Below are positions 719 through 53,848 of a DNA stretch of 64,000 nt, piece by piece; position 1 is the first letter of the stretch, and each line of letters starts with the position of its first letter. The position numbers and the translations under genes were made by a program. Under the pieces are notes generated by a model. The model saw nothing but the letters and a program-made list of their open reading frames with translations, was not told the origin of the DNA and made no database searches. The stretch is taken from the IMG/VR virus record IMGVR_UViG_3300033143_001962, positions 62,001-126,000 of that record, one strand, 5' to 3'.

Positions 719-2078
719 ATTTTTAACAGATGCAGAAAACATGAAGGAAAAGTTGGATACAGTATCTCCTTCATTTTGTTTAGCAAAGTGGAAGCAAGTA
801 TCCTTGCACTTAACAAATGGCATGAATAACTCTTGCTACCATCCTCCATTGCATAAAATTAATGTAGACGATATAATAAAAGATCCAAGCGCACTACATA
901 ATACAGCAGAAAAAGCTATAGCCAGAAAACAAATGGTGAGCGGCGAGCGACCCTCTGAATGTAGCTACTGTTGGGCAATGGAGGATAACGGTGAGTTAAG
1001 TGACAGGCATTACAGAAGTGGAGAACCATGGGCAGCACAGGACTTTGATACAATAGTCGCAAACCCAGAAGCTTCTGTAACGCCATCGTATGTAGAGGTT
1101 AATTTTAACCACTCATGTAACTTAGCTTGCTCTTATTGCAGCCCACAATTTTCGAGTACGTGGGGGGTTGAAGCAAGAAAGTTCGGAGCTTACCCTACTT
1201 CAACTCCACATAACGATCCTGCTTATTTTGCAGGTAATCGTAAACCAATTCCTAATCGCGAATACAATCCATACGTAGAAGCATTTTGGAAATGGTGGCC
1301 CGAGCTTTACAAAGACTTAGTACATTTCCGCATGACAGGCGGCGAACCATTACAAGATAAAAATACTTACAAAGTCTTTGATTATGTTTTGGAAAATCCA
1401 AAACCTGATTTACATTTGAATGTAACTTCAAACCTGTCTGTAGATCAGAAGCTGTGGGACAAATATTTAGGGTACGTTAAGCAATTAACTACTGGCAAGA
1501 TTGAACACTTCATGCAGTACGTATCAGTAGACACATGGGGTGAACAAGCAGAGTACATACGGCACGGGTTAGACTTTGATTTACTTTGGAAACGAGTAGA
1601 CCAGTACTTGACAGAAGTGCCTGAGTACTGTAGTATTACATTTATAATTACTATGAATAACTTGTCGATATACAGTTTGGATAAGTTAATGGAAGGCATC
1701 TTAGAGTTGCGTAAGAAGCACAGTAAAACATATCAGCGTGTATGGTTTGATACTCCAGTCTTGCGTACACCAGAATGGCAGAGCTTACAAATTCTGCCAG
1801 AGTACTATGCAACTAAGTTGATGGATATAAAAGAATTCATGATAGACAACGCGGAGACAGCTGATGAGCTGTATCATGGATTCAAAGATTATGAAATACA
1901 ACGTATGAGCAGAGACATAGCTTGGATGAGACAAGGAACTGATAACGTGGAACAAAAGAAAGCGGACTTTTATCGCTTCTTTAACGAAGCAGACAAACGT
2001 CACGGCACTAACTTTGAAGAAACATTTCCAGAACTTACACACTGGTACCGCGCAGGAAGATACCTTGCTAACAAGTAA
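708..2078 (+). CDS. Radical SAM protein with N-terminal twitch/SPASM-like domain (RS1)
   Basis: CNLACSYC, MTGGEP; N-terminal FCLAKW..SCYH and CSYCW. Confidence 0.9.
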   Translation: MKSKFLTDAENMKEKLDTVSPSFCLAKWKQVSLHLTNGMNNSCYHPPLHKINVDDIIKDPSALHNTAEKAIARKQMVSGERPSECSYCWAMEDNGELSDRHYRSGEPWAAQDFDTIVANPEASVTPSYVEVNFNHSCNLACSYCSPQFSSTWGVEARKFGAYPTSTPHNDPAYFAGNRKPIPNREYNPYVEAFWKWWPELYKDLVHFRMTGGEPLQDKNTYKVFDYVLENPKPDLHLNVTSNLSVDQKLWDKYLGYVKQLTTGKIEHFMQYVSVDTWGEQAEYIRHGLDFDLLWKRVDQYLTEVPEYCSITFIITMNNLSIYSLDKLMEGILELRKKHSKTYQRVWFDTPVLRTPEWQSLQILPEYYATKLMDIKEFMIDNAETADELYHGFKDYEIQRMSRDIAWMRQGTDNVEQKKADFYRFFNEADKRHGTNFEETFPELTHWYRAGRYLANK

Positions 2079-10966: not shown

Positions 10967-12002
10967 AGACACTGGTGATTTACTTCCAGTTTACATTGAT
11001 GTATTTAACGATGCATTAAGTACAAAGTGGTACGGCGCACTTAACGATATACTAGCAAAAGAATTACACTTAGAAAAGAACTATCAGTTCTTTGGTATTC
11101 CGCAGTACGAACGTAATGGTGATTACATCACTGATCAAATAAACGATTCAATACATGCAATAAATGATGCTAACTTAGGTTATCACATACACGATTGTTT
11201 TAGTATGGCAAACACTATACAGGACATCGATGGCGAAATAGGCGATAACCTCCCTGGTCGTAAACTAATACATCAACGTATGAATGATTTGCATAGATAT
11301 TTTGAAGACTTGCAGGGTACGTCCGGAAATATGTCTCCTTTTTATAATAAAGCAGATAAGTACACTCGCTGGCACATTAGGCAATTGAACTTGCTATGTC
11401 ACGAGTACGAAAGTTGGGTACTTAGTTACCGCAAACAAGAGTACGCTAAGGAATGGATGCGTCCGAGTCAGTTAATGTGCTTTTTAAATGCTCCACGCTT
11501 TGAATTGACAGCAGAAGATTACGAAAGTTTCGGTATCGAAACAATAGCTCGACCCTTAGGTGGTGTTTTTGTAGGTGTTAACAAAGCAGTAGGAAAACAT
11601 CACTGGGAAGTATTCCAAGATGAAGGCGGACGTAGCATAGATGAATTAACTACTTCAACATTGCGTTCACAGACAGAAGCAGCAGGAGACTTTGATATAG
11701 AATGGGCAAACAATCCAGGTGAATACGAGTTTATGAAAAAAGAATTAGCTGATTTTAAACAGTGGCTAATAAACAACAACTTTGATCCAGCCGATAAATC
11801 ACTAACAATTGGTCATCCACAAGTTGCTCAAGTTAACCTAAACCGTAGCTTTGGCACTGACGATTATGCTATAATATGGAAGCAGCTATTTAATCATTTA
11901 GATGTGTTCTCAATTGAAACCGAGGACAATAGAGTTGAGTTCGAATACAATTGGGATGATCTGGATTACAGAGAACAGCAAGTAGAGGCACTTAGTAAAT
12001 GA
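10944..12002 (+). CDS. Hypothetical protein, paralog of 29682..30527
   Basis: Shared LH(R/N)(Y/I)FE, LNL-x-x-H-x-x-E and G-x-V-(F/Y)...VGK motifs. Start moved to ATG 10944. Confidence 0.75.
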   Translation: MVITLQNRDTGDLLPVYIDVFNDALSTKWYGALNDILAKELHLEKNYQFFGIPQYERNGDYITDQINDSIHAINDANLGYHIHDCFSMANTIQDIDGEIGDNLPGRKLIHQRMNDLHRYFEDLQGTSGNMSPFYNKADKYTRWHIRQLNLLCHEYESWVLSYRKQEYAKEWMRPSQLMCFLNAPRFELTAEDYESFGIETIARPLGGVFVGVNKAVGKHHWEVFQDEGGRSIDELTTSTLRSQTEAAGDFDIEWANNPGEYEFMKKELADFKQWLINNNFDPADKSLTIGHPQVAQVNLNRSFGTDDYAIIWKQLFNHLDVFSIETEDNRVEFEYNWDDLDYREQQVEALSK

Positions 12003-30564: not shown

Positions 30565-30641
30565 TGGTGCCGATTGTCGGATTCGAACTGACCACCTACG
30601 CATTACAAGTGCGTTGCTCTGCCAAAATGAGCTAAACCGGC
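30565..30641 (-). tRNA. trnT: tRNA-Thr(UGU) with encoded CCA
   Basis: GCCGGTT-TA-GCTC-ATTTTGGCA-GAGC-A-ACGCA-CTTGTAA-TGCGT-AGGTG-GTCAG-TTCGAAT-CCGAC-AATCGGC-ACCA; 77 nt; one A-C mismatch in the T stem. Confidence 0.95.
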
Positions 30642-38703: not shown

Positions 38704-38935
38704 TATCGTTTTCTCTGTTAATGAAGAACATTTTGTACGAGACGATGTTGTCTCCGCGCGTTGCGTAGCCTGTGTGTTTGTCAAGTTTTTTCCATTTTAT
38801 TTTTGTTGTTTCGGGAAAGGTTTCAAGGTAGTGTTCACATGCGGTGATAGCTGATTGCTTGCTAGACACAACCGCAAGTGGTTCTGGATGAACCTCTTGG
38901 TCTTCGTGTCCTGACATTATCACATACGCTCTCAT
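38690..38935 (-). CDS. Hypothetical protein coupled to the DGC
   Basis: 81 aa; its stop overlaps the DGC start. Confidence 0.65.
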   Translation of the reverse strand: MRAYVIMSGHEDQEVHPEPLAVVSSKQSAITACEHYLETFPETTKIKWKKLDKHTGYATRGDNIVSYKMFFINRENDNAAT

Positions 38936-38964
38936 TGTATCACCTGTTTATTAACTGTTAACTA

Positions 38965-39024
38965 AGTATAGCAGACCCGTAACAAAAGGTCAACCTTTTA
39001 ATCACTGTATAAATCAATGACTTA
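38965..39024 (-). promoter_or_regulatory. Sigma70-type promoter with IHF-consensus site (opposite orientation)
   Basis: TTGACC-17-TATACT (38993 to 38965); AATCAATGACTTA at 39012-39024. Confidence 0.8.
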
Positions 39025-43903: not shown

Positions 43904-44111
43904 TAGTCAACCCACTCTACGTCAATCCATCTATGCACTATGTACCTGGCACCACTCTGTGGGTTAGCGTGAACGACCTCACTGTAAATTTGCCTAATAC
44001 TAACACCTTCGCTCCATCTGGTTTCACCCTGTAACGTAAGCGGGATGAACAAGAAAAGCTTATGTTTTATTCTTTTAGCACCTAACTTAGGTTCTGGTTT
44101 AGCTTTCCATC

Positions 44112-44372
44112 TCATACCGGCTTCACACTCTTAATTGAATCAAGTCTAAAACTACGCCAGCCCTTTGCGTTCACATCGTAAACTGAAAGTACTTCTAAGT
44201 TTTCTTTTTTGGGTTTAGTTTCAGCATCTTCTTTTACTACGCGAGGAGGCAATTCACTTTCTTGTAGTGTGCAAGTCATAACACGCTCATCGCCATTCTT
44301 CTTAGTGAATGTGACAACTACTGTGTCGTCTTTTAATACAGCTTGCAAGTATTTTCTATCAAAATCAGTCAT
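44112..44372 (-). CDS. WYL_2/Sm-like SH3-barrel protein
   Basis: VTFTKKNGDERVMTCTL...VYDVNAKGWRSFRLDSI. Confidence 0.75.
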   Translation of the reverse strand: MTDFDRKYLQAVLKDDTVVVTFTKKNGDERVMTCTLQESELPPRVVKEDAETKPKKENLEVLSVYDVNAKGWRSFRLDSIKSVKPV

Positions 44373-44396
44373 GCTATCTCCTTAAATTAGAGCACA

Positions 44397-44425
44397 AGTA
44401 TAACAGAATTATGCGTGAGAGTCAA
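44397..44425 (-). promoter_or_regulatory. Sigma70-type early promoter
   Basis: TTGACT-17-TATACT. Confidence 0.7.
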
Positions 44426-44593
44426 AAAAATTGCCCGTGTTTGGCACAATAGACTTTTTGATTTTGCCAAAGCGGGAGTACAGTTTGACACCGATAATGT
44501 AGTCGGTTTTTGGTTTATGGAATTCGTTTTCTAAGTACGCTACCATCCTTGGATCAGCGTTGTTGTGTGTAGGTCGTGTTGGACCAGTTAACA

Positions 44594-44902
44594 TTATGCA
44601 GGCATTACCTTATTGGACATAATATCGAATGTTAGCTTTTTAGCTACATCTTCTTTAAAGTACGGGAAGATAGTAAACAATTCGAACGCTTCAACTTCGT
44701 TGTACTCTTTTTCTTTCTTTTTCTTAACTTCTATTAAATCCCATAGATAATTGTGCTGCTTAAAGCGTAGTGCTTTGCCACGCGCACCCCAGCAAGCATA
44801 ATGCTTACTACCTACTTTAATAGCAGTCCAAACCTTGTCGGACTTAACACCATTCTTAGTTTTGTTGCACCAGCCGATGTAAATAAATTCTATATCAGAC
44901 AT
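44594..44902 (-). CDS. WGR-like domain protein
   Basis: SDKVW.....G..Y..WGARG pattern. Confidence 0.5.
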   Translation of the reverse strand: MSDIEFIYIGWCNKTKNGVKSDKVWTAIKVGSKHYACWGARGKALRFKQHNYLWDLIEVKKKKEKEYNEVEAFELFTIFPYFKEDVAKKLTFDIMSNKVMPA

Positions 44903-46958
44903 TAATCAATTTCCTTTACTTCACCGTTAAACATTTCGGCGTATTCGGTTGCAGTACCCCAAGACATTTTAACAGACTCTGCCCCGTCTTTGTACTTTAC
45001 GTAGAACTTACCGTACATGTTTTCGTACACCATAAGCCCTCCACCACCGTAACTAACCTTACGCCATTGTGTTCTGAACCATTTTAATAGTTTCATACGT
45101 CCTCCAGCTTCAAGTACCCGTATTCCTTTTCTAAGAATACATCAATATGGTACTCACCGTTACGACCATTCCCGGCATCACGTTTAAAGTACCGTTTAAA
45201 TTCTTCGCACGTTGCGATGCTGCGCATATCATACGCCCATCGCATGTGCTTAGATAATAAAATTACAGTAATCATTTCCGGTGTGTATTGTTGCTCACGC
45301 AAGAATAAAATAATGTTTGTCCACGCTTGCTCACCGTAATCATCGTACATGTACGCATTGCAAGTCTTGTGGACTATTTCATGCGTCTTAATAAGATCGA
45401 ATAAATCATTCATGTTAGTCCCCGTTCTTGCCAATTGATAATTGTATCTAAGAAGACAAAATACTTTTCGACACTATCATCTTTGGCACCGGTGGAGTGT
45501 TGTATGGTCTGCCAAGCAACTAATCCATCGTACATTGAACCGTAACGCAGGATCATATAAACTTCAATGTCCTTACGCTTAAGCTCGTCGAACTCATCTT
45601 CTGTCAGCTCAGTATTCATACTATCCTTCGTGCCATGGTAGTAAATAATGGTACTTGCCGTACATTGCAATTAAGAAGTATACAGCTAACGCAATAGTAA
45701 AAATGTCCGGCCACTTTAGTTTTTTAATATTCATACTTCAATTCATCTTGGTTAGGCATTTCTTCAACGTCTACAACCGTGCCCGCGACTTCTTTGTTCA
45801 AGTTATCAGCCCAAGTATCAGCAGTTTCTAAATCCTCGAACATTACAAAATCCTCGTACAATTTTGTACGGGTCGTATTCATTCTTATTACTTTGAATTC
45901 TCTCATGCTCATTTTGCTATCTCCTGCAATAAATATTTTATTAATCTGAACCTGATTCGTACCCAGAGTCATAACCTTCGTCGTACCCATCTGAATAACA
46001 TGCGCTACCAAAATCTTCGATATCGCTTATGCGCCAGGATGATGTATTGTATTCTTTAGAAGCCTGGAACGCATCACATTCATCTTTAGTTCCTGTGAAA
46101 TGAATAGTTGTCCCGGTGTAACATAAGTACGTGTCGTTCATTGCGTAAGTGCCTCTAGTAATTTATCTTCACTTTCCTTAGTAATGAATTCCATCTTCTT
46201 ACGCTTGAACACACTTTCAATAAATCCTGGTCTGTTCCAACGTCCGACTATTTTCTTAGCATGTGTGCCATATAGCGAATTGGTTTCATCCCCGCATCGA
46301 GTGCAAATTTCACTGTACTCTTTTTCTTTTTCACTGACCTGGTCACCAGTCTTAGGGCATTTATAAATGTAAGAGTATGTTGTATCAAGTTTCATCCTTT
46401 TCTCCAACGCTTATAACGTTCATGAATTTGACCAATGATAACACCAGCAAGTATTCCGTAAAATAATAAATGTATAGCACTCATTGATTATACCTCTGCT
46501 TTTAAGTTTTCACTGTGCCAGCCACGTACCCAATCTTCTAACATTTCTAACGTGTTATTTGGATGCCGGCCTAACAGTTCCATAAATTCTTTGTCTAGGA
46601 ATGGCGCATTTGCAGTATCATTTAAAAATGCAGCTCTGCCCATTTCTTGTGATTTTGAAAAAGCCATAATTAACTCCTAGAAGTAGTGTATGCGAGTTCG
46701 ATCTGTACCTTCGAACCGTTCGTCGTATTCTAATGTAATATTTCCGACTTCGTTGATTCCGACAGTTTTGCCACTGCATGACTTTTCCATGTCTTTAGCG
46801 TCTAAGTAACGGAAGCCATTGTAAGCACCAGCTCTATGAAGTGTCTGTTCTAAAAGCATTATAACACCTTCTCGCATTTGAACTTGGTCATCTGCTAAGT
46901 TCATTAGCAGAGCATTTGCATGGTTTGTCATATCTTCAATTTTTGCTGTCTTACGCAT
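44902..46958 (-). other. Run of short hypothetical early ORFs
   Basis: Coupled 28-113 aa ORFs downstream of the promoter at 46987-47014. Confidence 0.65.
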
Positions 46959-46986
46959 AAGTCACCCGTTTTGTTAATATGTAGTA

Positions 46987-47152
46987 ATTATAGCAGGTCT
47001 GTTCAAAAGGTCAACCTTTTATTTCAGTTAATGGCAATTAGATACAATACGCAGGTACTTGAAAAGTTACAACACCTTATTTTTGTAAGTCGTTGTTTTA
47101 TATAGAGTTCTTATTTTGTAGGGTTATATTGTGGTTGTGTAAGTCATTGATT
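46987..47152 (-). promoter_or_regulatory. Sigma70-type promoter and an AT-rich region with clustered IHF-like sites
   Basis: TTGACC-16-TATAAT (TG-extended); exact site TAAGTCATTGATT at 47140-47152, degenerate TAAGTCGTTGTTT at 47086-47098. Confidence 0.7.
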
Positions 47153-47442
47153 TACTTACGCTTATTAGGGTTACGTTTGTTAGTCATTCTATTTGAATCT
47201 TTGTAGTTCCGGGGCTTATTGCGCATGTACTTGGCAAATTTCTGCATTGCTTCGTGTTCCATTATTAAGTGTACTGAATGATACCAGTTAGCGAGTTCGA
47301 CATTAGTAAAGATGCTATGTATCTTAGAGTGGCAGACACCGTGTAAAGTTACAGTCTCTGAACCTTTCTTAGACTTAGGGATAAGGTGATGCTCCGTCAT
47401 TGTATCATCACTCTCCCTATTACATATTGGACATTTATACAT
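47152..47442 (-). CDS. Small HNH-family nuclease
   Basis: CPIC...TEHHLIP...LH..CH..IH. Confidence 0.75.
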   Translation of the reverse strand: MYKCPICNRESDDTMTEHHLIPKSKKGSETVTLHGVCHSKIHSIFTNVELANWYHSVHLIMEHEAMQKFAKYMRNKPRNYKDSNRMTNKRNPNKRK

Positions 47443-47638
47443 TTTCGTCTACAGTTGTTTCGTACGTATGAAATTCATAATCGAGTGGTTCGCCATCTTC
47501 ATCCACCGCTATTTTCAGAACTGCAATACGCGCAGCACGTAGTTCTTCTGTACTAAACACTTCGCACGGAGTATAAAATGTATTCCATTCTTCACGCGCA
47601 CCAGTGTCTTGATCGTAGTTTAATATGTAAACTTTCAT

Positions 47639-48163
47639 TTAAGCCTCTTCGTGTCTGTTGTAGTACTTGCCAGTTTCGATATTAAGAATTTTGTTATCGA
47701 TAGGATCCTTCAAGTAATTAAAATAACTTGTAGATTTCTTGTACTTGCTAAAAGTCTTGATAAACTTCTTAGCATCGTTCCTACGTTGGAACCACAAAGT
47801 TAATTGATGGCCCTGAACAATTCTGTACTGCTCGGTACCCATTGCCCACCCTTGCTCTTTACCTTGCGGCTTAATGTTATCACTTAACCACTGCAAGACT
47901 TCATCCTTTAAAAATGGACAATCTTTAGTAGCCATCTCCTCAACTGGATAGTCTATGTCGGGGTATTTTTCCTTCATCTTTCCCAAAACGGATTTTTGAA
48001 TTTCTAGATCTTCTAAGGACACAACACGTTTGATATCTATTAGACTATCCCAATCATCGGAGTCATTTTCGCGTTTGTTAATCTCTACCATGTTGCCGGC
48101 ATCGTAAAAATCGTTACTGTGCTCAGCCTGTGTACAAAAACAATGGTTAATATGATGATGCAT
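47639..48163 (-). CDS. Hypothetical protein
   Basis: 174-aa ORF with GAGG SD. Confidence 0.7.
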   Translation of the reverse strand: MHHHINHCFCTQAEHSNDFYDAGNMVEINKRENDSDDWDSLIDIKRVVSLEDLEIQKSVLGKMKEKYPDIDYPVEEMATKDCPFLKDEVLQWLSDNIKPQGKEQGWAMGTEQYRIVQGHQLTLWFQRRNDAKKFIKTFSKYKKSTSYFNYLKDPIDNKILNIETGKYYNRHEEA

Positions 48164-48371
48164 AATTACCTCTTAGAGTTAATATCCAAATGGTTTATTC
48201 TCCCATTTAAATACTTCTGTTAATGTTTTTAGATCTACAACCTTATCGTAGTCAGCTTTCGCATCTTCGTACTCGTCATAAGATTGTGTATCTACCTCTT
48301 CGGACAAAGCCCAGGTACCATCTTCGTCTAAGTAGATGTATAACTCGACTTCGTCCTCGATAGTTTTATTT

Positions 48372-49808
48372 TCAGATAGCTGCATTTTCTCTTACTTCAT
48401 CAAATGTGTATTCTTTAGTAACTGTACCATTAAAGAATACTGTTTTAAGTTGAACTTCTTGGTCACCGACGTGCTCTAAACGAACAGTTCTGTAATTGCC
48501 GAAGTCGTCTTTAACTAATGTTAACCGTCCTTTCTTAGATACTTTACCAGGATCAGTCTTTGGATCTTTAAACACATCAATCCATTTGTCATCTACGAAC
48601 GCTGCACTTGCCTTCATCGCAAACTTCTGTGTGTCACGATCTAGTTGCTGCAACATGCCACCACCCATACCGTATGCTACGTTATCTGCACTAAACCCAG
48701 CATCTTCGACAGCGGTAATGATTTCTTTAATGCTGTCGTATGTAATGCCATCACCTTGTATTACACGAATGCAATCAGGAAGCACTTTGTATCCAGTGTC
48801 AGTTTCGGTAGTACCGAACTTGTCAGCTAAAATGTTTAAAACATCTACGACTACTGTAGCAGGATCACCACTGTCTGGACGTATAACAATAGTTGCACCA
48901 CTGTCGATAACTTCCTGCTTAAGCTCGCCACCCCAGAAGTTTTCCGCTGCGTTCATCATATCGTAACTATCTGATACTACTGCAACCGTTGCGCCAGGCT
49001 TAGCAAACTGCTTCAACATGTTACGCATAGCATCTATCTCACCTTCGCGTCCGCCCCAACTTGTCATTGTACTGTGTTCACTTGCTGGAATACTAAACCC
49101 AGGCATCTTGTCTTCGAAGTATTCATCACCCATAGTTAACCATTTAGCTAGTGGTTCAGCGTTGTAGTACTCCATAGCAGTTAACGCACCAGTTATGGTA
49201 TCAGTTACCATAAAGTTAACTAAGTGAGCAGCACCGCCGATACCAGCACTCTCCATGCTACTAACGCCTCGCGCTCCGAAGTCAACTAACTTGAACGGTA
49301 ACGTATTCATGTCGCCACCTGTCTTCATCAAACTAGCTGCAAGTAATTTCTTAATAGCACGAGAGTTAGTTGCGACGGTTGTTCCGTACCATACAGCACG
49401 TAACAATGCAGTTTCAACGTAACTTGTTAACCAAAAGAACTCTGGGTCAGTGTTTATAATTGTAAACAATGCATTACCTGTTGGAACAGTTGTTCCTTCT
49501 GCTACTGCTTTGATTTCAAGTGGTAAGAATCCATCACACTTAGTAACAACACGCATCCAGCCATCGTAGTTGAATGGTGTACCGTGCGCTGCCGCAAAGT
49601 CTCTGCCCATCTCAACTTCTAATTCTGTTACTTGTTTTGATAGTACATTCTTTAAGAATATTTGTAAGCCAAACATTGTAGTGTCTGGAAACTTGCCACC
49701 TCTTGATTCACCGTATGATGCGATGTAAGATGTGTTTGGTGGGTATTGTAAAAATTGCCCAAGCTTATAGCTGTCTGTGTTTAGTACTATTGATTTTAAT
49801 ATATTCAT
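48372..49808 (-). CDS. nadV: Nicotinamide phosphoribosyltransferase (NAMPT)
   Basis: LNTDSYK, LVDFGARG, ASEHS, VSDSYD, IRPDSGDP, IQGDG, GMGGG, AMK. Confidence 0.96.
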   Translation of the reverse strand: MNILKSIVLNTDSYKLGQFLQYPPNTSYIASYGESRGGKFPDTTMFGLQIFLKNVLSKQVTELEVEMGRDFAAAHGTPFNYDGWMRVVTKCDGFLPLEIKAVAEGTTVPTGNALFTIINTDPEFFWLTSYVETALLRAVWYGTTVATNSRAIKKLLAASLMKTGGDMNTLPFKLVDFGARGVSSMESAGIGGAAHLVNFMVTDTITGALTAMEYYNAEPLAKWLTMGDEYFEDKMPGFSIPASEHSTMTSWGGREGEIDAMRNMLKQFAKPGATVAVVSDSYDMMNAAENFWGGELKQEVIDSGATIVIRPDSGDPATVVVDVLNILADKFGTTETDTGYKVLPDCIRVIQGDGITYDSIKEIITAVEDAGFSADNVAYGMGGGMLQQLDRDTQKFAMKASAAFVDDKWIDVFKDPKTDPGKVSKKGRLTLVKDDFGNYRTVRLEHVGDQEVQLKTVFFNGTVTKEYTFDEVRENAAI

Positions 49809-50045
49809 AATAAAACTCCTTTATTATATGTGACGTGTTTCCACGTTATGGTCTGTTAAATTGATCTAACATTTCTTGTCTATCTTCTTCGATTGTTTTT
49901 TCGTATTCTACTATCATGCGCTCACCTAAAATAATACTAGGATGAGAATGTTCGCAACACCGTTGCCCGTTAAATCTTTCACCGCGTAACTGAACAATGC
50001 CACAGTTCTTGCACTTTACTTCTGTAACCATTCGTGTTGTTCTAA

Positions 50046-50399
50046 TCATTTTACTACCTTTAATTCAGTGACCGCGCGATTTACTTCTTCTTCTCCACGC
50101 ACCTCTCTGCCATCGTTAAAAATAATATATGCACGATTTGATTCCAGGCCATGCCCGCAACACGCAACTCTCACGTCTGGCAAGTTTGCAATGCATGGAT
50201 CGTGTCCTTCACTTGTCTTAACTCCGTTGCACTTAGGACATTTTCTATCTGCTGCATCTTCCTCGATTGGTTTATCATTGTCTGCATAACGCCACACTGC
50301 AAAATGCTCATTGCCATTTTCAGAAATAGTGTATTCGTCGTCTCGGAGATATATCTCGTGTCCGAACAAATCAGTTATGCTTTTCCAATTCTCTACCAT
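50046..50399 (-). CDS. Cys-rich hypothetical protein
   Basis: CPKC...GHDPCI..LP.V..ACCGHG. Confidence 0.7.
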   Translation of the reverse strand: MVENWKSITDLFGHEIYLRDDEYTISENGNEHFAVWRYADNDKPIEEDAADRKCPKCNGVKTSEGHDPCIANLPDVRVACCGHGLESNRAYIIFNDGREVRGEEEVNRAVTELKVVK

Positions 50400-50405
50400 A
50401 CTATC

Positions 50406-51305
50406 CTACTTAAAGTTTAACATACGTTCAATTGGAGCTCTCGCCATTACAATCTCATCGTATTTTAAATAATCTATTGCAGTACCACCAGTACCGTCAA
50501 TAGCCGCTTGCACTGCTTCTACAGTATTAAGCTTCATATACGGACAAGTCGCGCACATGCAACCTTTGTAACCTGGCACTAATCTAAAATCTAATTCAGG
50601 TCGTAGCTTTCGCATATCGTTAAGTAACCCTTCTTCAGTTGCTACCCAAATAGTACCAACTTTATTCGGAAAGTTCTTAACCCATTCTAACATCTTACTT
50701 GTACTACCAACAAAGGCAGCTTTATCTAAAATGTCAATTGGACTTTCTGGATGAGCAATAACGTACTTACTACCGTCTGTCCATCCTGCCATATCTTTTT
50801 CAAGTGCTTCTAAATTAAACTGATCGTGTACTTCGCATACAGATGTAAACACGTTCATATCGTACCCGAACTCAGCGTTGATGTACGCGCCCATATTAGC
50901 GTCAGGACTGAATATAACATCATTGCCTGCATCAATCTCTGCTTCTATTATAGCATTAACGTTGGCAGAAGTCACTATAACATCTGCCAAAGCTTTCATT
51001 TCGACTGAGCTGTTAATGTACATAACGTGAGTTGCCCCGGGATTAATAATTTTGAAATTACGTAACCCTACGATATCAGTTTGGGTGACTAATGAACACG
51101 TTGCATTAATGTCAGGAATAATAACTTCGGTGTCCGGAAGCATAACCTTAGCAGTTTCTGCCATGAACTTAACACCAGCAAATACTAAACGTTTAGGATT
51201 GACCTTTTGCGCTTCTTGTATTAAGCCTAAGCTATCACCAACGTAGTCAGCCATTTCTTTAACTTCTTCAGGTGCGTAATAGTGTGCTACTGTCATAGTT
51301 TCCAT
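50406..51305 (-). CDS. nadA: Quinolinate synthase A
   Basis: AHYY, GDSL, GV.FMAETAK, three Fe-S Cys (ATCSL, VCEVH, CPYMK), YINSS, AHPE, GSTS. Confidence 0.9.
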   Translation of the reverse strand: METMTVAHYYAPEEVKEMADYVGDSLGLIQEAQKVNPKRLVFAGVKFMAETAKVMLPDTEVIIPDINATCSLVTQTDIVGLRNFKIINPGATHVMYINSSVEMKALADVIVTSANVNAIIEAEIDAGNDVIFSPDANMGAYINAEFGYDMNVFTSVCEVHDQFNLEALEKDMAGWTDGSKYVIAHPESPIDILDKAAFVGSTSKMLEWVKNFPNKVGTIWVATEEGLLNDMRKLRPELDFRLVPGYKGCMCATCPYMKLNTVEAVQAAIDGTGGTAIDYLKYDEIVMARAPIERMLNFK

Positions 51306-52000: not shown

Positions 52001-53083
52001 TTAAGCCCTCCCTAACATGTTCTTAATAATTGAAAAGTGATCTTCGAACATTACACCTTGCATTTTTTCAAACTCTGCAAGTGGAACCCACTTAGCTACG
52101 GCTGCATCATCACTGCCTTTAACTTTTGGCAAATCTTGTGCATCGTCTAGTTTGAAGTAGTAAACGAATGTAAGGGTTCTACCACGTAAAGAACGATTAG
52201 GTTCATCAAAAACTTCCTTAGCTACAATGGAACCACGTAGTACTTTTTCAGCAACCTTTAATTTAGTTTCTTCTCGTAACTCACGTATAACACCGTCCTG
52301 TACCATCTCGTTAGTTTCTAAGAAGCCACCGGGCATAGCCCATAAATCCTTACCTGGCATCTGTCCACGTTGTATTAATAAGACGTGTCCGCTTTGCTCA
52401 ACTACTGCGTCAACAGTAACAAAGTTTACATCGTATGGTGCTACTGCCCAGTCTTTCTTCTTTTGGATTTCATCTTCCCACTCGCATTGCAATTCAAAGA
52501 ACGTTGGAGTTTTGATAAACTTACGTACTTGATTACCGTATGCTTGACCTGGGATAACATTGTCTGTGAATGATGCTTGATTGCTAAACATTAATTGTCT
52601 AATAGCTGTAGAATCAATTTGATCATCTTTAGCAGGGTACGCTTGCATTTCAATGAAGTCGTACTGTTTGAAGTAGTTAAGGTAATAACTACTCTTGTCT
52701 TTATCGTGTCCGATGAACGCAACTTTTACTTCACCGTCACTGCCACGCTTATCGTAGAATTTTTTACTCGCCCATACTTCTTGCTTAACTTCTTCTACCT
52801 TCTCGCCTACTTGCTTAATCCATTCATTATCATTATAAGATATGTCATTGATATCAGCGACGTTAAGATTTAAGATTTGGGCATTGGCCATAATGGCTTC
52901 TTTGCGTTCTTGGTATGTCCATGGGTTTTTTGTAGTGCGTGGTCCGTTTGCTGAACCAATTAGTACTAACACGTTGTCAGCCAAGTAATCTGCTTTCTTA
53001 AGCGTTTCTTGGTGACCTATGTGGAAAGGTTGAAACCGTCCTATATAGACGATCAGATCATATTTCTTTTGTTCTGTATTCAT
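52001..53083 (-). CDS. nadM: Bifunctional NMN adenylyltransferase / Nudix ADP-ribose pyrophosphatase
   Basis: GRFQPFHIGH (HxGH), IGSA, NPW, DSTAIR; Nudix GGF....E.....RELREET. Start moved to ATG 53083 after GGGAG. Confidence 0.95.
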   Translation of the reverse strand: MNTEQKKYDLIVYIGRFQPFHIGHQETLKKADYLADNVLVLIGSANGPRTTKNPWTYQERKEAIMANAQILNLNVADINDISYNDNEWIKQVGEKVEEVKQEVWASKKFYDKRGSDGEVKVAFIGHDKDKSSYYLNYFKQYDFIEMQAYPAKDDQIDSTAIRQLMFSNQASFTDNVIPGQAYGNQVRKFIKTPTFFELQCEWEDEIQKKKDWAVAPYDVNFVTVDAVVEQSGHVLLIQRGQMPGKDLWAMPGGFLETNEMVQDGVIRELREETKLKVAEKVLRGSIVAKEVFDEPNRSLRGRTLTFVYYFKLDDAQDLPKVKGSDDAAVAKWVPLAEFEKMQGVMFEDHFSIIKNMLGRA

Positions 53084-53240
53084 GATAGACTCCCTATTCA
53101 TGTTATAAATTTGTACAGTAGCTAGTTTCTCGCAGCCTTGTAGTGGTTTAGTATCTATAGTATACTAGCAAACCCTATAGGTCTCTCACCTATCGTAACG
53201 CTTTGAGCGCATCCTCTGCCGATCCTTACTGTTTACTTGC
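53081..53240 (-). ncRNA. Candidate structured 5' leader of the NAD operon
   Basis: About 155-nt untranslated leader with nested stems (see findings). Confidence 0.45.
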
Positions 53241-53245
53241 TGCTA

Positions 53246-53274
53246 ATTATAGCAGTGTACAGCTATTTAGTCAA
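53246..53274 (-). promoter_or_regulatory. Sigma70-type promoter for the NAD operon
   Basis: TTGACT-17-TATAAT with TG extension. Confidence 0.8.
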
Positions 53275-53293: not shown

Positions 53294-53848
53294 TTACCGA
53301 TGCCATTCTGCATACAGCCGCACATAATCATGGTCTGCATTCAAATTGAACTCTTCTGCCTCTGCACTTTGGGTGAATCCATGCTTATCTGCAAATTCTT
53401 GTAACTTTTCAAAAGTCCAAGGAAAGCAAGTTAAGTATTCTTCTTCATCGTCTGCTTTTGGTGGGATATATGGCATTAATCTCCAATATATTCGCCCCGT
53501 AGGTTTGAGACATTCTACGACTTTTGCAACTTGGGTACTAATTATTTCTTCAGTACCGAAGTTAACAGACCCTAGGCAAAAAGCAACATCAAAGAGGTGT
53601 GGTGGCACAAAATCTTCAATAGTAGAATGCACGTCGGCATGCTCATTTCCAGGATCTACCCCAATGCAGTTAGGTAGAATTTTACTAAATGGATTTGTGG
53701 CACAACCAACATCGAGCACTAATTCACCTTCTTTGATGTTATCGGCTAATTGTCTACCCGATATCTCAAATCCTGCGGTAAACTCAGTATCGCGTGTTTG
53801 CCACTTTTTCAAGTACCATTGATTCATTTTATCTTGGTTATGCCCCAT
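53294..53848 (-). CDS. Class I SAM-dependent methyltransferase-like protein
   Basis: VLDVGC, GVD, FDVAFCLGS, LKPTGRI. Confidence 0.7.
   Translation of the reverse strand: MGHNQDKMNQWYLKKWQTRDTEFTAGFEISGRQLADNIKEGELVLDVGCATNPFSKILPNCIGVDPGNEHADVHSTIEDFVPPHLFDVAFCLGSVNFGTEEIISTQVAKVVECLKPTGRIYWRLMPYIPPKADDEEEYLTCFPWTFEKLQEFADKHGFTQSAEAEEFNLNADHDYVRLYAEWHR

What the first reader, a model, noticed from the sequence alone, without database searches (positions are those of the whole stretch)
53103..53240. Multi-stem leader RNA with an alternative pairing ahead of the NAD operon: riboswitch candidate
Between a consensus promoter and nadM lie ~155 untranslated nt, rare in this dense genome. Nested helices (plus-strand coordinates): ACAGTA/TACTGT (53115/53227), GCAG/CTGC (53132/53216), ATAGGT/ACCTAT (53177/53188), GGTT+TAGTAT/ATACTA+AACC (53145-53174) and a small GCGC hairpin. 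ACTAGC (53164) can instead pair with GCTAGT (53121), a mutually exclusive fold next to the SD hairpin. I cannot match it to the NAD+-I or NAD+-II consensus from memory, so it may be a new cis-regulatory RNA.
Basis: partly seen in the sequence, partly recalled or inferred. Interest (0 to 1): 0.6.

Follow-up and report, generated by a model that had tools for sequence, protein, structure and literature searches.

The report
New pseudoknotted leader RNA before phage nadM
A 118-base folded RNA sits in the leader of a giant phage's NAD+-rebuilding operon; its helices are kept by matching mutations in three other phage contigs and it fits no catalogued RNA family, so it is a credible new regulatory RNA (riboswitch candidate) whose signal and mode of action are still unknown.

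Summary
The window comes from a 250-kb phage record.

The element spans 53232-53115(-). It begins 7-13 nt after a near-consensus promoter and ends 31 nt before the nadM start codon.

Homologs lie at the same place in three metagenomic relatives whose NadM is 84-64% identical. About 16 other relatives keep the same promoter and SD hairpin but lack the element.

Across the four copies, 98.5% of pair cells form a standard pair, and 9 of 34 pairs changed on both sides (3.2 expected; 0/500 shuffles).

The fold is P1, then P2 closing a four-way junction (P3, P4, P5). A 6-bp pseudoknot joins the P5 loop to the strand between P2 and P1. It competes with a local hairpin, P5a.

There is no Rfam 15 match, and the fold fits neither NAD+-I nor NAD+-II architecture.

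No terminator or anti-SD pairing was found. A real structured RNA is near certain; riboswitch function is plausible (about 0.4) but unproven.

The parts
53246..53274 (-). Promoter of the nadM operon: -35 TTGACT (53274-53269), 17-nt spacer, extended -10 TGcTATAAT (TATAAT 53251-53246)
   Evidence: Consensus scan gives 11 of 12 matches with TG. The same promoter block is conserved upstream of nadM in all relatives. The transcription start itself is inferred, not measured.
53240..53255 (.). Inverted repeat CTGCTA-TAAT-TAGCAG straddling the -10 hexamer. Possible operator; not part of the RNA element.
   Evidence: The arms covary among relatives: GTGCTA/TAGCAC, CTGTTA/TAACAG, ATGCTA/TAGCAT. It is absent from the other 19 sigma-70-like promoters found in the genome.
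53115..53232 (-). The structured RNA element, 118 nt, bounded by P1
   Evidence: The covariance model built without L014 finds L014:101-219 at 58.6 bits, E about 1e-14. It finds nothing else in the window, the 250-kb genome or 33 loci. No Rfam match.
53227..53232 (-). P1 5' strand, ACAGUA. It pairs with 53120-53115, UACUGU.
   Evidence: Invariant in all four homologs, so there is no covariation for or against it. Predicted in every homolog's own MFE fold. The presence/absence boundary of the element lies at P1.
53216..53222 (-). P2 5' strand, UC(G)GCAG, with a conserved bulged G. It pairs with 53135-53130, CUGCGA, and closes the four-way junction.
   Evidence: In L014 it is UC(G)UCGG/CCGAGG: two pairs changed on both sides, one U-A changed to U.G, 100% of cells paired.
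53198..53210 (-). P3 hairpin, GCGCU-CAA-AGCGU. Length and sequence vary between homologs.
   Evidence: In L009 it is ACGCC...GGCGU, extended to about 10 bp. In L014 it is AAUGU/GCAUU by eye; the model's alignment places this stem slightly differently. Three of 5 pairs changed on both sides, with one mismatch in L002.
53177..53193 (-). P4 hairpin, AUAGGU-GAGAG-ACCUAU, with an invariant GAGAG loop
   Evidence: In L014 it is AUAAGU/ACUUAU (G-C to A-U). In L009 one pair is U-A to U.G. 100% of cells paired.
53145..53174 (-). P5 hairpin: GGUUU 53174-53170 with AAACC 53149-53145, enclosing a 20-nt loop
   Evidence: L009 has GGUUA/UAACC by eye. The model's alignment places a gap there, so the tool counts no two-sided change in P5 (94.7% of cells paired). 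Predicted in each homolog's own fold.
53164..53169 (-). Pseudoknot 5' strand, GCUAGU, in the P5 loop. It pairs with 53126-53121, ACUAGC, which lies between P2 and P1.
   Evidence: It becomes ACUGGU/ACCAGU in L009 and GCCGGU/ACCGGC in L014. Three of 6 pairs are compensatory and 100% of cells are paired. The helix was not part of the covariance model, so this is an independent test. Duplex energy is -6.5 to -10 kcal/mol.
53149..53167 (-). P5a, a local hairpin: UAGUAU 53167-53162 with AUACUA 53154-53149. It overlaps the pseudoknot 5' strand and so excludes the pseudoknot.
   Evidence: An equivalent local hairpin engaging the pseudoknot strand appears in L009 (UGGU/ACCA) and L014 (GGUAAG/CUUGACC), and weakly in L002 (UAGU/GCUA). 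It is worth -4.5 to -4.7 kcal/mol, against -0.4 to -3.1 when that strand is kept free.
53103..53114 (-). A/U-rich linker, ACAAAUUUAUAA
   Evidence: Similar in the four element-bearing leaders. No terminator-like site is found here.
53081..53102 (-). SD/start-codon hairpin, CAUGA-AUAG-GGAGU-CUAU-CAUG. SD GGGAG is at 53094-53090 and the AUG at 53083-53081.
   Evidence: UAGGGAGUCUA occurs once in the 250-kb genome. It is invariant upstream of nadM orthologs with or without the element, and its outer stem covaries. Modelled accessibility does not depend on P1.
52001..53083 (-). nadM: bifunctional NMN adenylyltransferase / Nudix (ADP-ribose pyrophosphatase type), 360 aa
   Evidence: Pfam CTP_transf_like plus NUDIX. 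Phage homologs are annotated as NadM/Nudix.
48372..51305 (-). Downstream operon genes: NadA (50406-51305), a 117-aa ORF, and NAMPT (48372-49808)
   Evidence: Pfam NadA at 8.5e-76; NAPRTase plus NAMPT_N. The same order occurs in relatives L010/L011, L014 and L033.

Best explanation
The 118-nt stretch at 53232-53115(-) is a genuine, evolutionarily maintained, pseudoknotted RNA fold. It belongs to a family not present in Rfam 15.

Shown:
- It sits at the very 5' end of the mRNA predicted for a jumbo phage's NAD+-reconstitution operon: nadM-Nudix, NadA and NAMPT, a NARP2-type gene set.
- P1 leads to P2, which closes a four-way junction with hairpins P3, P4 and P5.
- The first six loop bases of P5 pair with the strand lying between P2 and P1. 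This pseudoknot locks the P1/P2 internal loop.
- About 20 junction and loop bases are conserved: RGGAU, the GAGAG loop, ACAMGS and RAA.

Inferred:
- It acts in cis as a sensor domain, that is, as a riboswitch aptamer.
- The local hairpin P5a forms first during transcription and holds the pseudoknot strand. Binding of a ligand, most plausibly a metabolite of the NAD+ cleavage and salvage cycle (NAD+, NMN, ADP-ribose, nicotinamide or PRPP), would decide whether the pseudoknot and P1 state wins. That state would then set the output of an operon that is costly to the phage when it is not needed.

Not resolved:
- How the fold state is read out. There is no terminator and no anti-SD pairing. Candidate read-outs are mRNA 5'-end stability, Rho access, or ribosome standby on the A/U-rich linker ahead of the separate SD hairpin.
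For: Homology and position:
- The same element lies between the same promoter and the same SD hairpin in L002 (NadM 84% identical to the window's), L009 (67%) and L014 (NadM is P0026; about 60% in the first search).
- Model R1 was trained on the window, L002 and L009. It recovers L014 at E about 1e-14 and nothing else.

Covariation:
- 98.5% of 134 pair cells form a standard pair.
- 9 pairs changed on both sides, against 3.2 +/- 1.4 in shuffles (0 of 500 reach it).
- Controls with the 3' partner slid by 1-3 columns give at most 1 such pair.
- The pseudoknot was not in the model. It has 3 of 6 compensatory pairs and no mismatch.
- In the columns that align unambiguously (P2, P4, pseudoknot), every changed pair keeps pairing.
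- Several G.U pairs fix the strand as nadM-sense.

Independent folds:
- Each homolog's own MFE fold gives P1-P5.

Constraint:
- The non-coding element is at least as conserved as the adjacent coding DNA: 92 vs 82%, 70 vs 67%, 67 vs 66%.

Competing states:
- P5a and the pseudoknot are competing states of similar energy in at least three of the four homologs.

Context:
- NARP2 (NAMPT plus NMNAT) rebuilds NAD+ against NAD+-depleting defence systems. It overproduces NAD+ even in undefended cells, consumes PRPP, and was toxic to clone. A gate on its expression therefore makes sense (bioRxiv 10.1101/2024.02.11.579819, read).
Against: - There are only four sequences, from three effectively independent lineages. 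R-scape-type statistics are not possible.
- The alignment used for counting was fitted to the nested structure.
- No expression platform was found. There is no terminator. Modelled SD and AUG accessibility is the same with P1 allowed or forbidden.
- The SD hairpin is kept unchanged in relatives without the element.
- The element is a P1-bounded module. It is present in 4 of about 20 related nadM loci and scattered on the NadM tree. That pattern fits a self-contained module (ribozyme, stabiliser, protein site) as well as it fits a riboswitch.
- In L002 a homing-endonuclease insertion of about 750 nt separates it from nadM. In L014 a 65-aa ORF intervenes.
- The transcription start and ligand binding are untested. 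No RNA sequencing run could be listed.
- The single-sequence fold is unremarkable, z = -1.1.
Confidence: 0.42

Rival explanations
1. It is a self-contained catalytic or processing module, such as a new self-cleaving ribozyme or a processing/stability element. It would trim or protect the 5' end of the operon mRNA without sensing a metabolite.
For: - The element is a discrete P1-bounded cassette. It is present or absent between close relatives with no change to the promoter or the SD hairpin.
- No expression platform was found.
- It starts within about 2-13 nt of the predicted transcription start.
- From my own knowledge: conserved junction bases together with a hairpin-loop to internal-loop pseudoknot are typical of small ribozymes such as twister and twister-sister, which are frequent in phage DNA.
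Against: - No match to any ribozyme model in Rfam 15, even at E up to 10.
- No conserved candidate cleavage dinucleotide is evident in J1/2, which reads AGGA, GAGAGA and AAGAAC in the three lineages.
- A plain stabiliser would not need a four-way junction, a pseudoknot and about 20 conserved unpaired bases.
Confidence: 0.2
2. It is a protein-binding leader: an operator or decoy for a phage or host regulator of the nadM operon. It might work together with the SD hairpin and the promoter palindrome.
For: - The nadM control region carries two further gene-specific conserved signals that look like protein sites. One is the covarying inverted repeat over the -10. The other is the SD hairpin UAGGGAGUCUA, unique in the genome.
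- P4 (AUAGG-UGAGAG-CCUAU) resembles the SD hairpin (AUAG-GGAGU-CUAU). It could therefore be a second site for the same binder.
Against: - No candidate RNA-binding protein co-occurs with the element on the short contigs available.
- The P4 to SD-hairpin resemblance is weaker in L014.
- The complexity of the fold exceeds that of typical phage translational operators.
Confidence: 0.15
3. It is processive-antitermination RNA of the put/EAR type. It would modify RNA polymerase just after initiation, so that transcription reads through the variable insertions into nadM, NadA and NAMPT.
For: - It is promoter-proximal and sits at the head of a roughly 5-kb operon that contains several ~200-nt intergenic gaps and homing-endonuclease insertions.
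- In L002 it is kept at 92% identity although 750 nt of antisense homing-endonuclease gene separate it from nadM. A translational device could not act across that distance.
Against: - L018 has the same endonuclease insertion without the element.
- No terminators were predicted in the region.
- It has no resemblance to a known antitermination RNA in Rfam.
Confidence: 0.08
4. It is a chance fold or the decaying remnant of a mobile insertion, with no function.
For: The single-sequence fold has z = -1.1. The distribution is sporadic and lies in a region that is a hotspot for homing-endonuclease insertion.
Against: - Compensatory changes occur in P2, P3, P4 and the pseudoknot (by eye also P5) across lineages that are 65-70% identical.
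- Conservation equals or exceeds that of the neighbouring coding sequence.
- The element does not co-occur with the endonucleases. The window, L009 and L014 have none nearby, while L017, L018 and L033 have one but no element.
Confidence: 0.05

Closest known systems
NAD+-I riboswitch (nadA motif)
   Same: A cis-acting leader RNA ahead of an NAD+ biosynthesis gene. The operon here also contains nadA.
   Different: NAD+-I consists of two tandem stem-bulge domains (P1/P1a, and P1b in domain 1). The RBS lies in domain 2, and the motif is found upstream of nadA in Acidobacteria (PMC6859854). Here there is one domain with a four-way junction and a 6-bp pseudoknot. The RBS lies outside it, it precedes nadM, and it is in phages. 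No Rfam hit.
NAD+-II riboswitch (pnuC motif)
   Same: A leader RNA of an NAD+ salvage gene that contains a pseudoknot.
   Different: NAD+-II is a small P1/P1a hairpin whose pseudoknot sequesters the RBS, found in Streptococcus upstream of pnuC (PMC7749635). Here the pseudoknot is internal, joining the P5 loop to the P2/P1 linker, and lies 47 nt or more upstream of the SD. The element is about twice as large, with five helices.
Junction-plus-pseudoknot aptamers such as SAM-I (from my own knowledge)
   Same: A closing helix, a four-way junction and a loop-to-junction pseudoknot, with conserved junction bases and variable peripheral hairpins.
   Different: There is no sequence or model similarity (no Rfam match). 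Here the pseudoknot partner lies outside the junction-closing helix P2. No expression platform is recognisable.
Orphan phage-borne riboswitch candidates such as the manA, wcaG and glnA motifs of cyanophages (from my own knowledge)
   Same: Structured leaders of auxiliary metabolic genes carried by phages.
   Different: Those are different folds, and all of them are in Rfam. This one is tied to an NAD+-reconstitution (counter-defence) operon.
Twister / twister-sister self-cleaving ribozymes (from my own knowledge)
   Same: P1, an internal loop, P2 and a multi-helix junction, with a hairpin loop docking onto the P1/P2 internal loop. Common in phage and metagenomic DNA. Modular.
   Different: No model match. 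Their conserved core bases are not recognisable here. The docking here is a full 6-bp helix.

Membership tests
NAD+-I riboswitch (nadA motif) | Two tandem stem-bulge domains (P1, internal bulge, P1a, and P1b in domain 1) | tested here: not met
   The covariation-supported fold is a single domain: P1, then P2 closing a four-way junction, plus a pseudoknot. The definition is from PMC6859854.
NAD+-I riboswitch (nadA motif) | Match to the family's covariance model | tested here: not met
   cmscan against all 4227 Rfam 15 models, at gathering score and at E up to 10, gave no NAD-related family on the window leader, L009 or L014. That the family is in Rfam rests on my own knowledge.
NAD+-I riboswitch (nadA motif) | RBS embedded in the second domain, upstream of nadA | tested here: not met
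   The SD lies 21 nt beyond P1 in its own hairpin, and the first gene is nadM.
NAD+-II riboswitch (pnuC motif) | P1/P1a hairpin with a pseudoknot that pairs with the RBS | tested here: not met
   The pseudoknot pairs 53169-53164 with 53126-53121, not with the SD at 53094-53090. The definition is from PMC7749635.
NAD+-II riboswitch (pnuC motif) | Match to the family's covariance model | tested here: not met
   No hit at E up to 10.
Riboswitch (generic) | Conserved aptamer-like fold with covarying helices and conserved junction bases | tested here: met
   98.5% of cells paired and 9 two-sided changes, with 0 of 500 shuffles reaching that. The conserved blocks RGGAU, GAGAG, ACAMGS and RAA are visible. 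Only 4 sequences.
Riboswitch (generic) | Located in the 5' UTR of a gene related to the ligand | tested here: inconclusive
   The position between a conserved 11-of-12 promoter and the nadM SD is shown. The transcription start is not measured, and no RNA run could be listed.
Riboswitch (generic) | Expression platform: a terminator/antiterminator or SD sequestration coupled to the aptamer | tested here: not met
   No terminator was found. An internal P5a-versus-pseudoknot competition does exist.
Riboswitch (generic) | Selective ligand binding that changes the fold and gene expression | not testable with these tools
   Needs in-line probing or SHAPE, and reporter assays.
Known self-cleaving ribozyme classes (hammerhead, twister, twister-sister, pistol, hatchet, HDV-like) | Match to a class model, and site-specific self-cleavage | tested here: not met
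   No Rfam hit at E up to 10. Cleavage itself is not testable here.
NARP2-type phage NAD+ reconstitution operon (context, not the RNA) | NAMPT together with an NMN adenylyltransferase encoded by the phage | tested here: met
   NAPRTase plus NAMPT_N at 48372-49808. CTP_transf_like plus NUDIX at 52001-53083. The definition is from bioRxiv 10.1101/2024.02.11.579819. Enzyme activities are not tested.

The most novel reading that the evidence does not exclude
A phage-encoded riboswitch of a new class that reads the state of the host NAD+ pool (NAD+ itself, or the products of immune NAD+ cleavage such as ADP-ribose or nicotinamide). It would switch on the phage's NAD+-reconstitution (NARP2-type) counter-defence operon only when the host has triggered NAD+ depletion. 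That would make it an RNA sensor of an antiviral immune response.
Probability: 0.2. Interest if true: 0.88.

Novelty: new variant of a known kind. Interest (0 to 1): 0.62.

Why it matters
NAD+ depletion is one of the commonest outputs of bacterial anti-phage systems, including Thoeris, DSR, SIR2-HerA, SEFIR and short Argonautes. Phages answer by rebuilding NAD+.

The NARP2 route is reported to overproduce NAD+, to consume PRPP, and to have been toxic to clone. How phages regulate it is an open question.

A dedicated, conserved, pseudoknotted RNA at the head of such an operon gives a concrete object to test. If it binds an NAD+-cycle metabolite, it would be a third and structurally unrelated NAD-related riboswitch class. 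It would also be the first riboswitch tied to counter-defence. If it is instead a ribozyme or a protein operator, it is still a new RNA family.

The result also shows that the nadM control region in this phage group is layered: a promoter palindrome, an optional RNA module, and a gene-specific SD hairpin.

Tried and rejected
Homolog searches that found nothing:
- Exact and degenerate DNA pattern scans for core stretches of the element gave 0 hits in every collection. These were viral contigs, metagenome contigs and genome contigs. The tools leave out records near the window's own genome, and L002, L009 and L014 come from ENA and Logan, which those scans do not cover.
- blastn (word size 11) of the window and L009 leaders against 50,697 cultured phage records gave only chance 20-26-nt matches. 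Megablast of the locus gave none.
- The search for related loci with NadM alone found none. With a NadM alignment it found 13 loci, none carrying the element. With a NadA alignment it found only L018's record again.
- Model R1 searched over the whole own genome and five related jumbo-phage records found only the known copy. There is no paralogue by blastn or nhmmer either.

Reads:
- The look-up of sequencing runs listed no run. Read laying was therefore not used, and there is no evidence on the transcription start or on expression.

Ideas considered and dropped:
- tRNA-like or cloverleaf fold: ARAGORN finds nothing here, and the arm and loop sizes do not fit.
- Small ORF in the leader: the only one is 8 codons, and the G.U pairs and compensatory pattern argue for RNA.
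- Anti-SD pairing by the P4 3' strand (CCUAU with AUAGG): not conserved in L009 or L014.
- P1 3' strand pairing with codons 2-4 of nadM (UACAG): present in the window only.
- Resemblance to ykkC-type motifs, recalled from memory: the order of the blocks differs and there is no Rfam hit.
- SD-like words in J1/2 (UAAGGAUC): not conserved.
- Association of the element with homing endonucleases: rejected, because they do not co-occur.

Full report
**Setting.**
- The window is bases 62001-126000 of a 249,797-bp IMG/VR virus record, estimated 72% complete: a jumbo phage.
- Around the finding, the genes run on the minus strand.
- The ORF at 52001-53101(-) carries a cytidylyltransferase-like (NMN adenylyltransferase) domain and a NUDIX domain. 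It is homologous to the phage NadM/Nudix proteins.
- The real start is most likely the ATG at 53083, seven bases after GGGAG.
- Downstream lie two small ORFs, NadA (50406-51305), a 117-aa ORF and NAMPT (48372-49808).
- NAMPT plus NMNAT is the gene pair defined as NARP2, a phage pathway that rebuilds NAD+ against NAD+-depleting defence systems (bioRxiv 10.1101/2024.02.11.579819).
- Upstream, a 184-aa ORF with no family match ends at 53294.

**Checking the observation.**
- A promoter with 11 of 12 consensus matches and an extended -10 lies at 53274-53246(-). This leaves a leader of about 155 nt.
- The gap is one of ten gaps of 120 nt or more in 64 kb, with a median gap of -1.
- By itself the fold is not unusual: -35.5 kcal/mol, z = -1.1.
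- Rfam 15 gives no match, either at gathering score for the whole window or at E up to 10 for the leader.

**Relatives.**
- A protein search with NadM gave many metagenomic relatives. I fetched the DNA around twelve of them and thirteen IMG/VR loci.
- All members of this phage group share the promoter block and an SD hairpin with the invariant core UAGGGAGUCUA.
- Four carry the element between the two:
  - the window;
  - L002:2096-2214 (NadM 84% identical);
  - L009:915-1043 (67%);
  - L014:101-219 (NadM is P0026, about 60% identical).
- The others have a 15-35-nt leader instead. These include L003 (80% identical NadM) and L008, L010, L013, L015, L018, L019, L020, L032 and L033.
- The boundary of presence or absence falls at the two strands of P1. 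The carriers are scattered on the NadM similarity ranking.
- The element is thus a discrete module that has been gained or lost repeatedly.

**Structure.**
- A covariance model built from the window, L002 and L009 with helices P1-P5 found L014, which was not in the training set, at 58.6 bits (E about 1e-14). It found nothing else in 166 kb of loci, in the 250-kb genome or in five related jumbo-phage records.
  - 98.5% of 134 pair cells are standard pairs;
  - 9 of 34 pairs have changes on both sides, against 3.2 +/- 1.4 in shuffles (0 of 500 reach 9);
  - controls with the 3' partner slid by 1-3 columns give at most 1.
- Helix by helix:
  - P1 (ACAGUA/UACUGU) is invariant.
  - P2 becomes UC(G)UCGG/CCGAGG in L014: two compensatory pairs, with the bulged G kept.
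  - P3 changes completely in sequence and length.
  - P4 changes G-C to A-U in L014 and keeps its GAGAG loop.
  - P5 reads GGUUA/UAACC in L009 by eye. The tool's alignment does not count this change.
  - The pseudoknot GCUAGU/ACUAGC becomes ACUGGU/ACCAGU in L009 and GCCGGU/ACCGGC in L014.
- The pseudoknot was not part of the model, so its three compensatory pairs and 100% pairing are an independent test.
- G.U pairs in P2, P3, P4 and P5 would be A.C mismatches on the other strand. The RNA is therefore nadM-sense.
- Each homolog's own minimum-energy fold reproduces P1-P5.
- The element is at least as conserved as the adjacent coding DNA: 92 vs 82%, 70 vs 67%, 67 vs 66%.
- I regard a selected RNA structure as established, with one caveat: there are only three independent lineages.

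**The alternative pairing.**
- In the window the pseudoknot 5' strand (53169-53164) overlaps the local hairpin UAGUAU/AUACUA (P5a).
- A comparable local hairpin engaging the same strand is predicted in L009 (UGGU/ACCA) and L014 (GGUAAG/CUUGACC), and weakly in L002.
- P5a is worth -4.5 to -4.7 kcal/mol. The pseudoknot duplex is worth -6.5 to -10 kcal/mol.
- The base that changes from A to G in the pseudoknot strand is matched by U to C in both of its partners.
- So two exclusive states are maintained. This is what a switch, or an ordered co-transcriptional folding path, would look like.

**What is missing for a riboswitch.**
- There is no terminator-like site.
- No conserved complement to the SD exists inside the element.
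- In partition-function models of all four leaders, the SD and AUG pairing probabilities do not move when P1 is forbidden.
- The SD hairpin is a separate, nadM-specific signal. It occurs once in 250 kb and is present with or without the element.
- In L002 a homing-endonuclease gene on the opposite strand (phrog_655) separates the element from nadM by about 750 nt. In L014 a 65-aa ORF intervenes.
- No sequencing run could be listed, so I have no evidence on the transcription start or on expression.

**Interpretation.**
- The combination points to an RNA with a precise tertiary fold that recognises something. It has a four-way junction, a covarying pseudoknot, about 20 conserved unpaired bases and variable peripheral hairpins. 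It sits at the head of a metabolic operon whose unregulated expression is reported to be costly.
- A metabolite-sensing aptamer for the NAD+ cycle is my leading reading (about 0.4).
- The rivals are a self-contained ribozyme or processing module (0.2), a protein operator or decoy (0.15), an antitermination RNA (0.08) and no function (0.05).
- The modular gain and loss, and the lack of an expression platform, are the main reasons not to go higher on the riboswitch.

**Comparison with known families.**
- NAD+-I consists of tandem stem-bulge domains with the RBS in the second domain (PMC6859854).
- NAD+-II is a small hairpin whose pseudoknot covers the RBS (PMC7749635).
- Neither architecture, and neither model, fits here.
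- No Rfam 15 family touches the element in the window, L009 or L014.
- Full-text searches for riboswitch terms together with phage and NAD+ terms found no paper that reports a structured RNA ahead of phage nadM. A paper on NAD+ genes of jumbo phages does not mention one either.
- I therefore class it as a new RNA family within the known kind 'structured cis-acting leader / orphan riboswitch candidate'.

**Limits.**
- The sample is small.
- The alignment is fitted to the model for the nested helices.
- All homolog searches at the DNA level in the large collections came back empty. They do not cover the ENA and Logan sources where three of the four copies were found.

Noticed in passing
window 53240-53255: An inverted repeat, CTGCTA-TAAT-TAGCAG, straddles the -10 of the nadM promoter. 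Its arms covary among relatives (GTGCTA/TAGCAC, CTGTTA/TAACAG, ATGCTA/TAGCAT), with a spacer of 3-7 nt. None of the other 19 sigma-70-like promoters found in the genome has it. It may be an operator for a regulator of the NAD operon.
   Followed up: partly
window 53081-53102 (-): The SD/start hairpin has the core UAGGGAGUCUA. This word occurs once in the 250-kb genome, is invariant ahead of nadM in relatives down to 57% protein identity, and has a covarying outer stem. It looks like a gene-specific translational operator, independent of the element.
   Followed up: partly
L002:2268-2987(-); L017:1-297(-); L018 about 760-1480(-); L033:641-1180(+); L034:112-651(+): Homing-endonuclease genes are inserted between the nadM promoter/SD and nadM in several relatives. 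They are phrog_655-type on the opposite strand, or GIY-YIG SegE-like on the same strand. Each time nadM acquires a new SD (AUAGGAGUUAU). In L002 and L018 a degenerate copy of the nadM 5' codons remains behind the old SD. The site is an insertion hotspot.
   Followed up: partly
window 50406-51305 (-): NadA (quinolinate synthase family, 8.5e-76) is kept in the operon in the window, L010/L011, L013, L014 and L033. No NadB-type (PF00890) or NadC (PF01729) gene is found in the 250-kb record, which is 72% complete. It is an orphan NadA next to a salvage pathway.
   Followed up: partly
window 53294-53848 (-): A 184-aa ORF directly upstream of the promoter has no Pfam or PHROG match. It is absent at this position in L002, where the 89-aa neighbour abuts the promoter.
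   Followed up: no
window 44000-50400 (-): Downstream of NAMPT lies a run of small ORFs (86-174 aa) separated by gaps of about 200 nt. One of them is an HNH endonuclease ORF at 47152-47442. The gaps were not examined for RNA structure beyond the Rfam scan.
   Followed up: no
window 10967-11599 and 38785-39021: These are the other large ORF-free gaps in the window, 633 nt and 237 nt. Rfam finds only a tRNA-Thr at 30565-30641 in the whole window.
   Followed up: no
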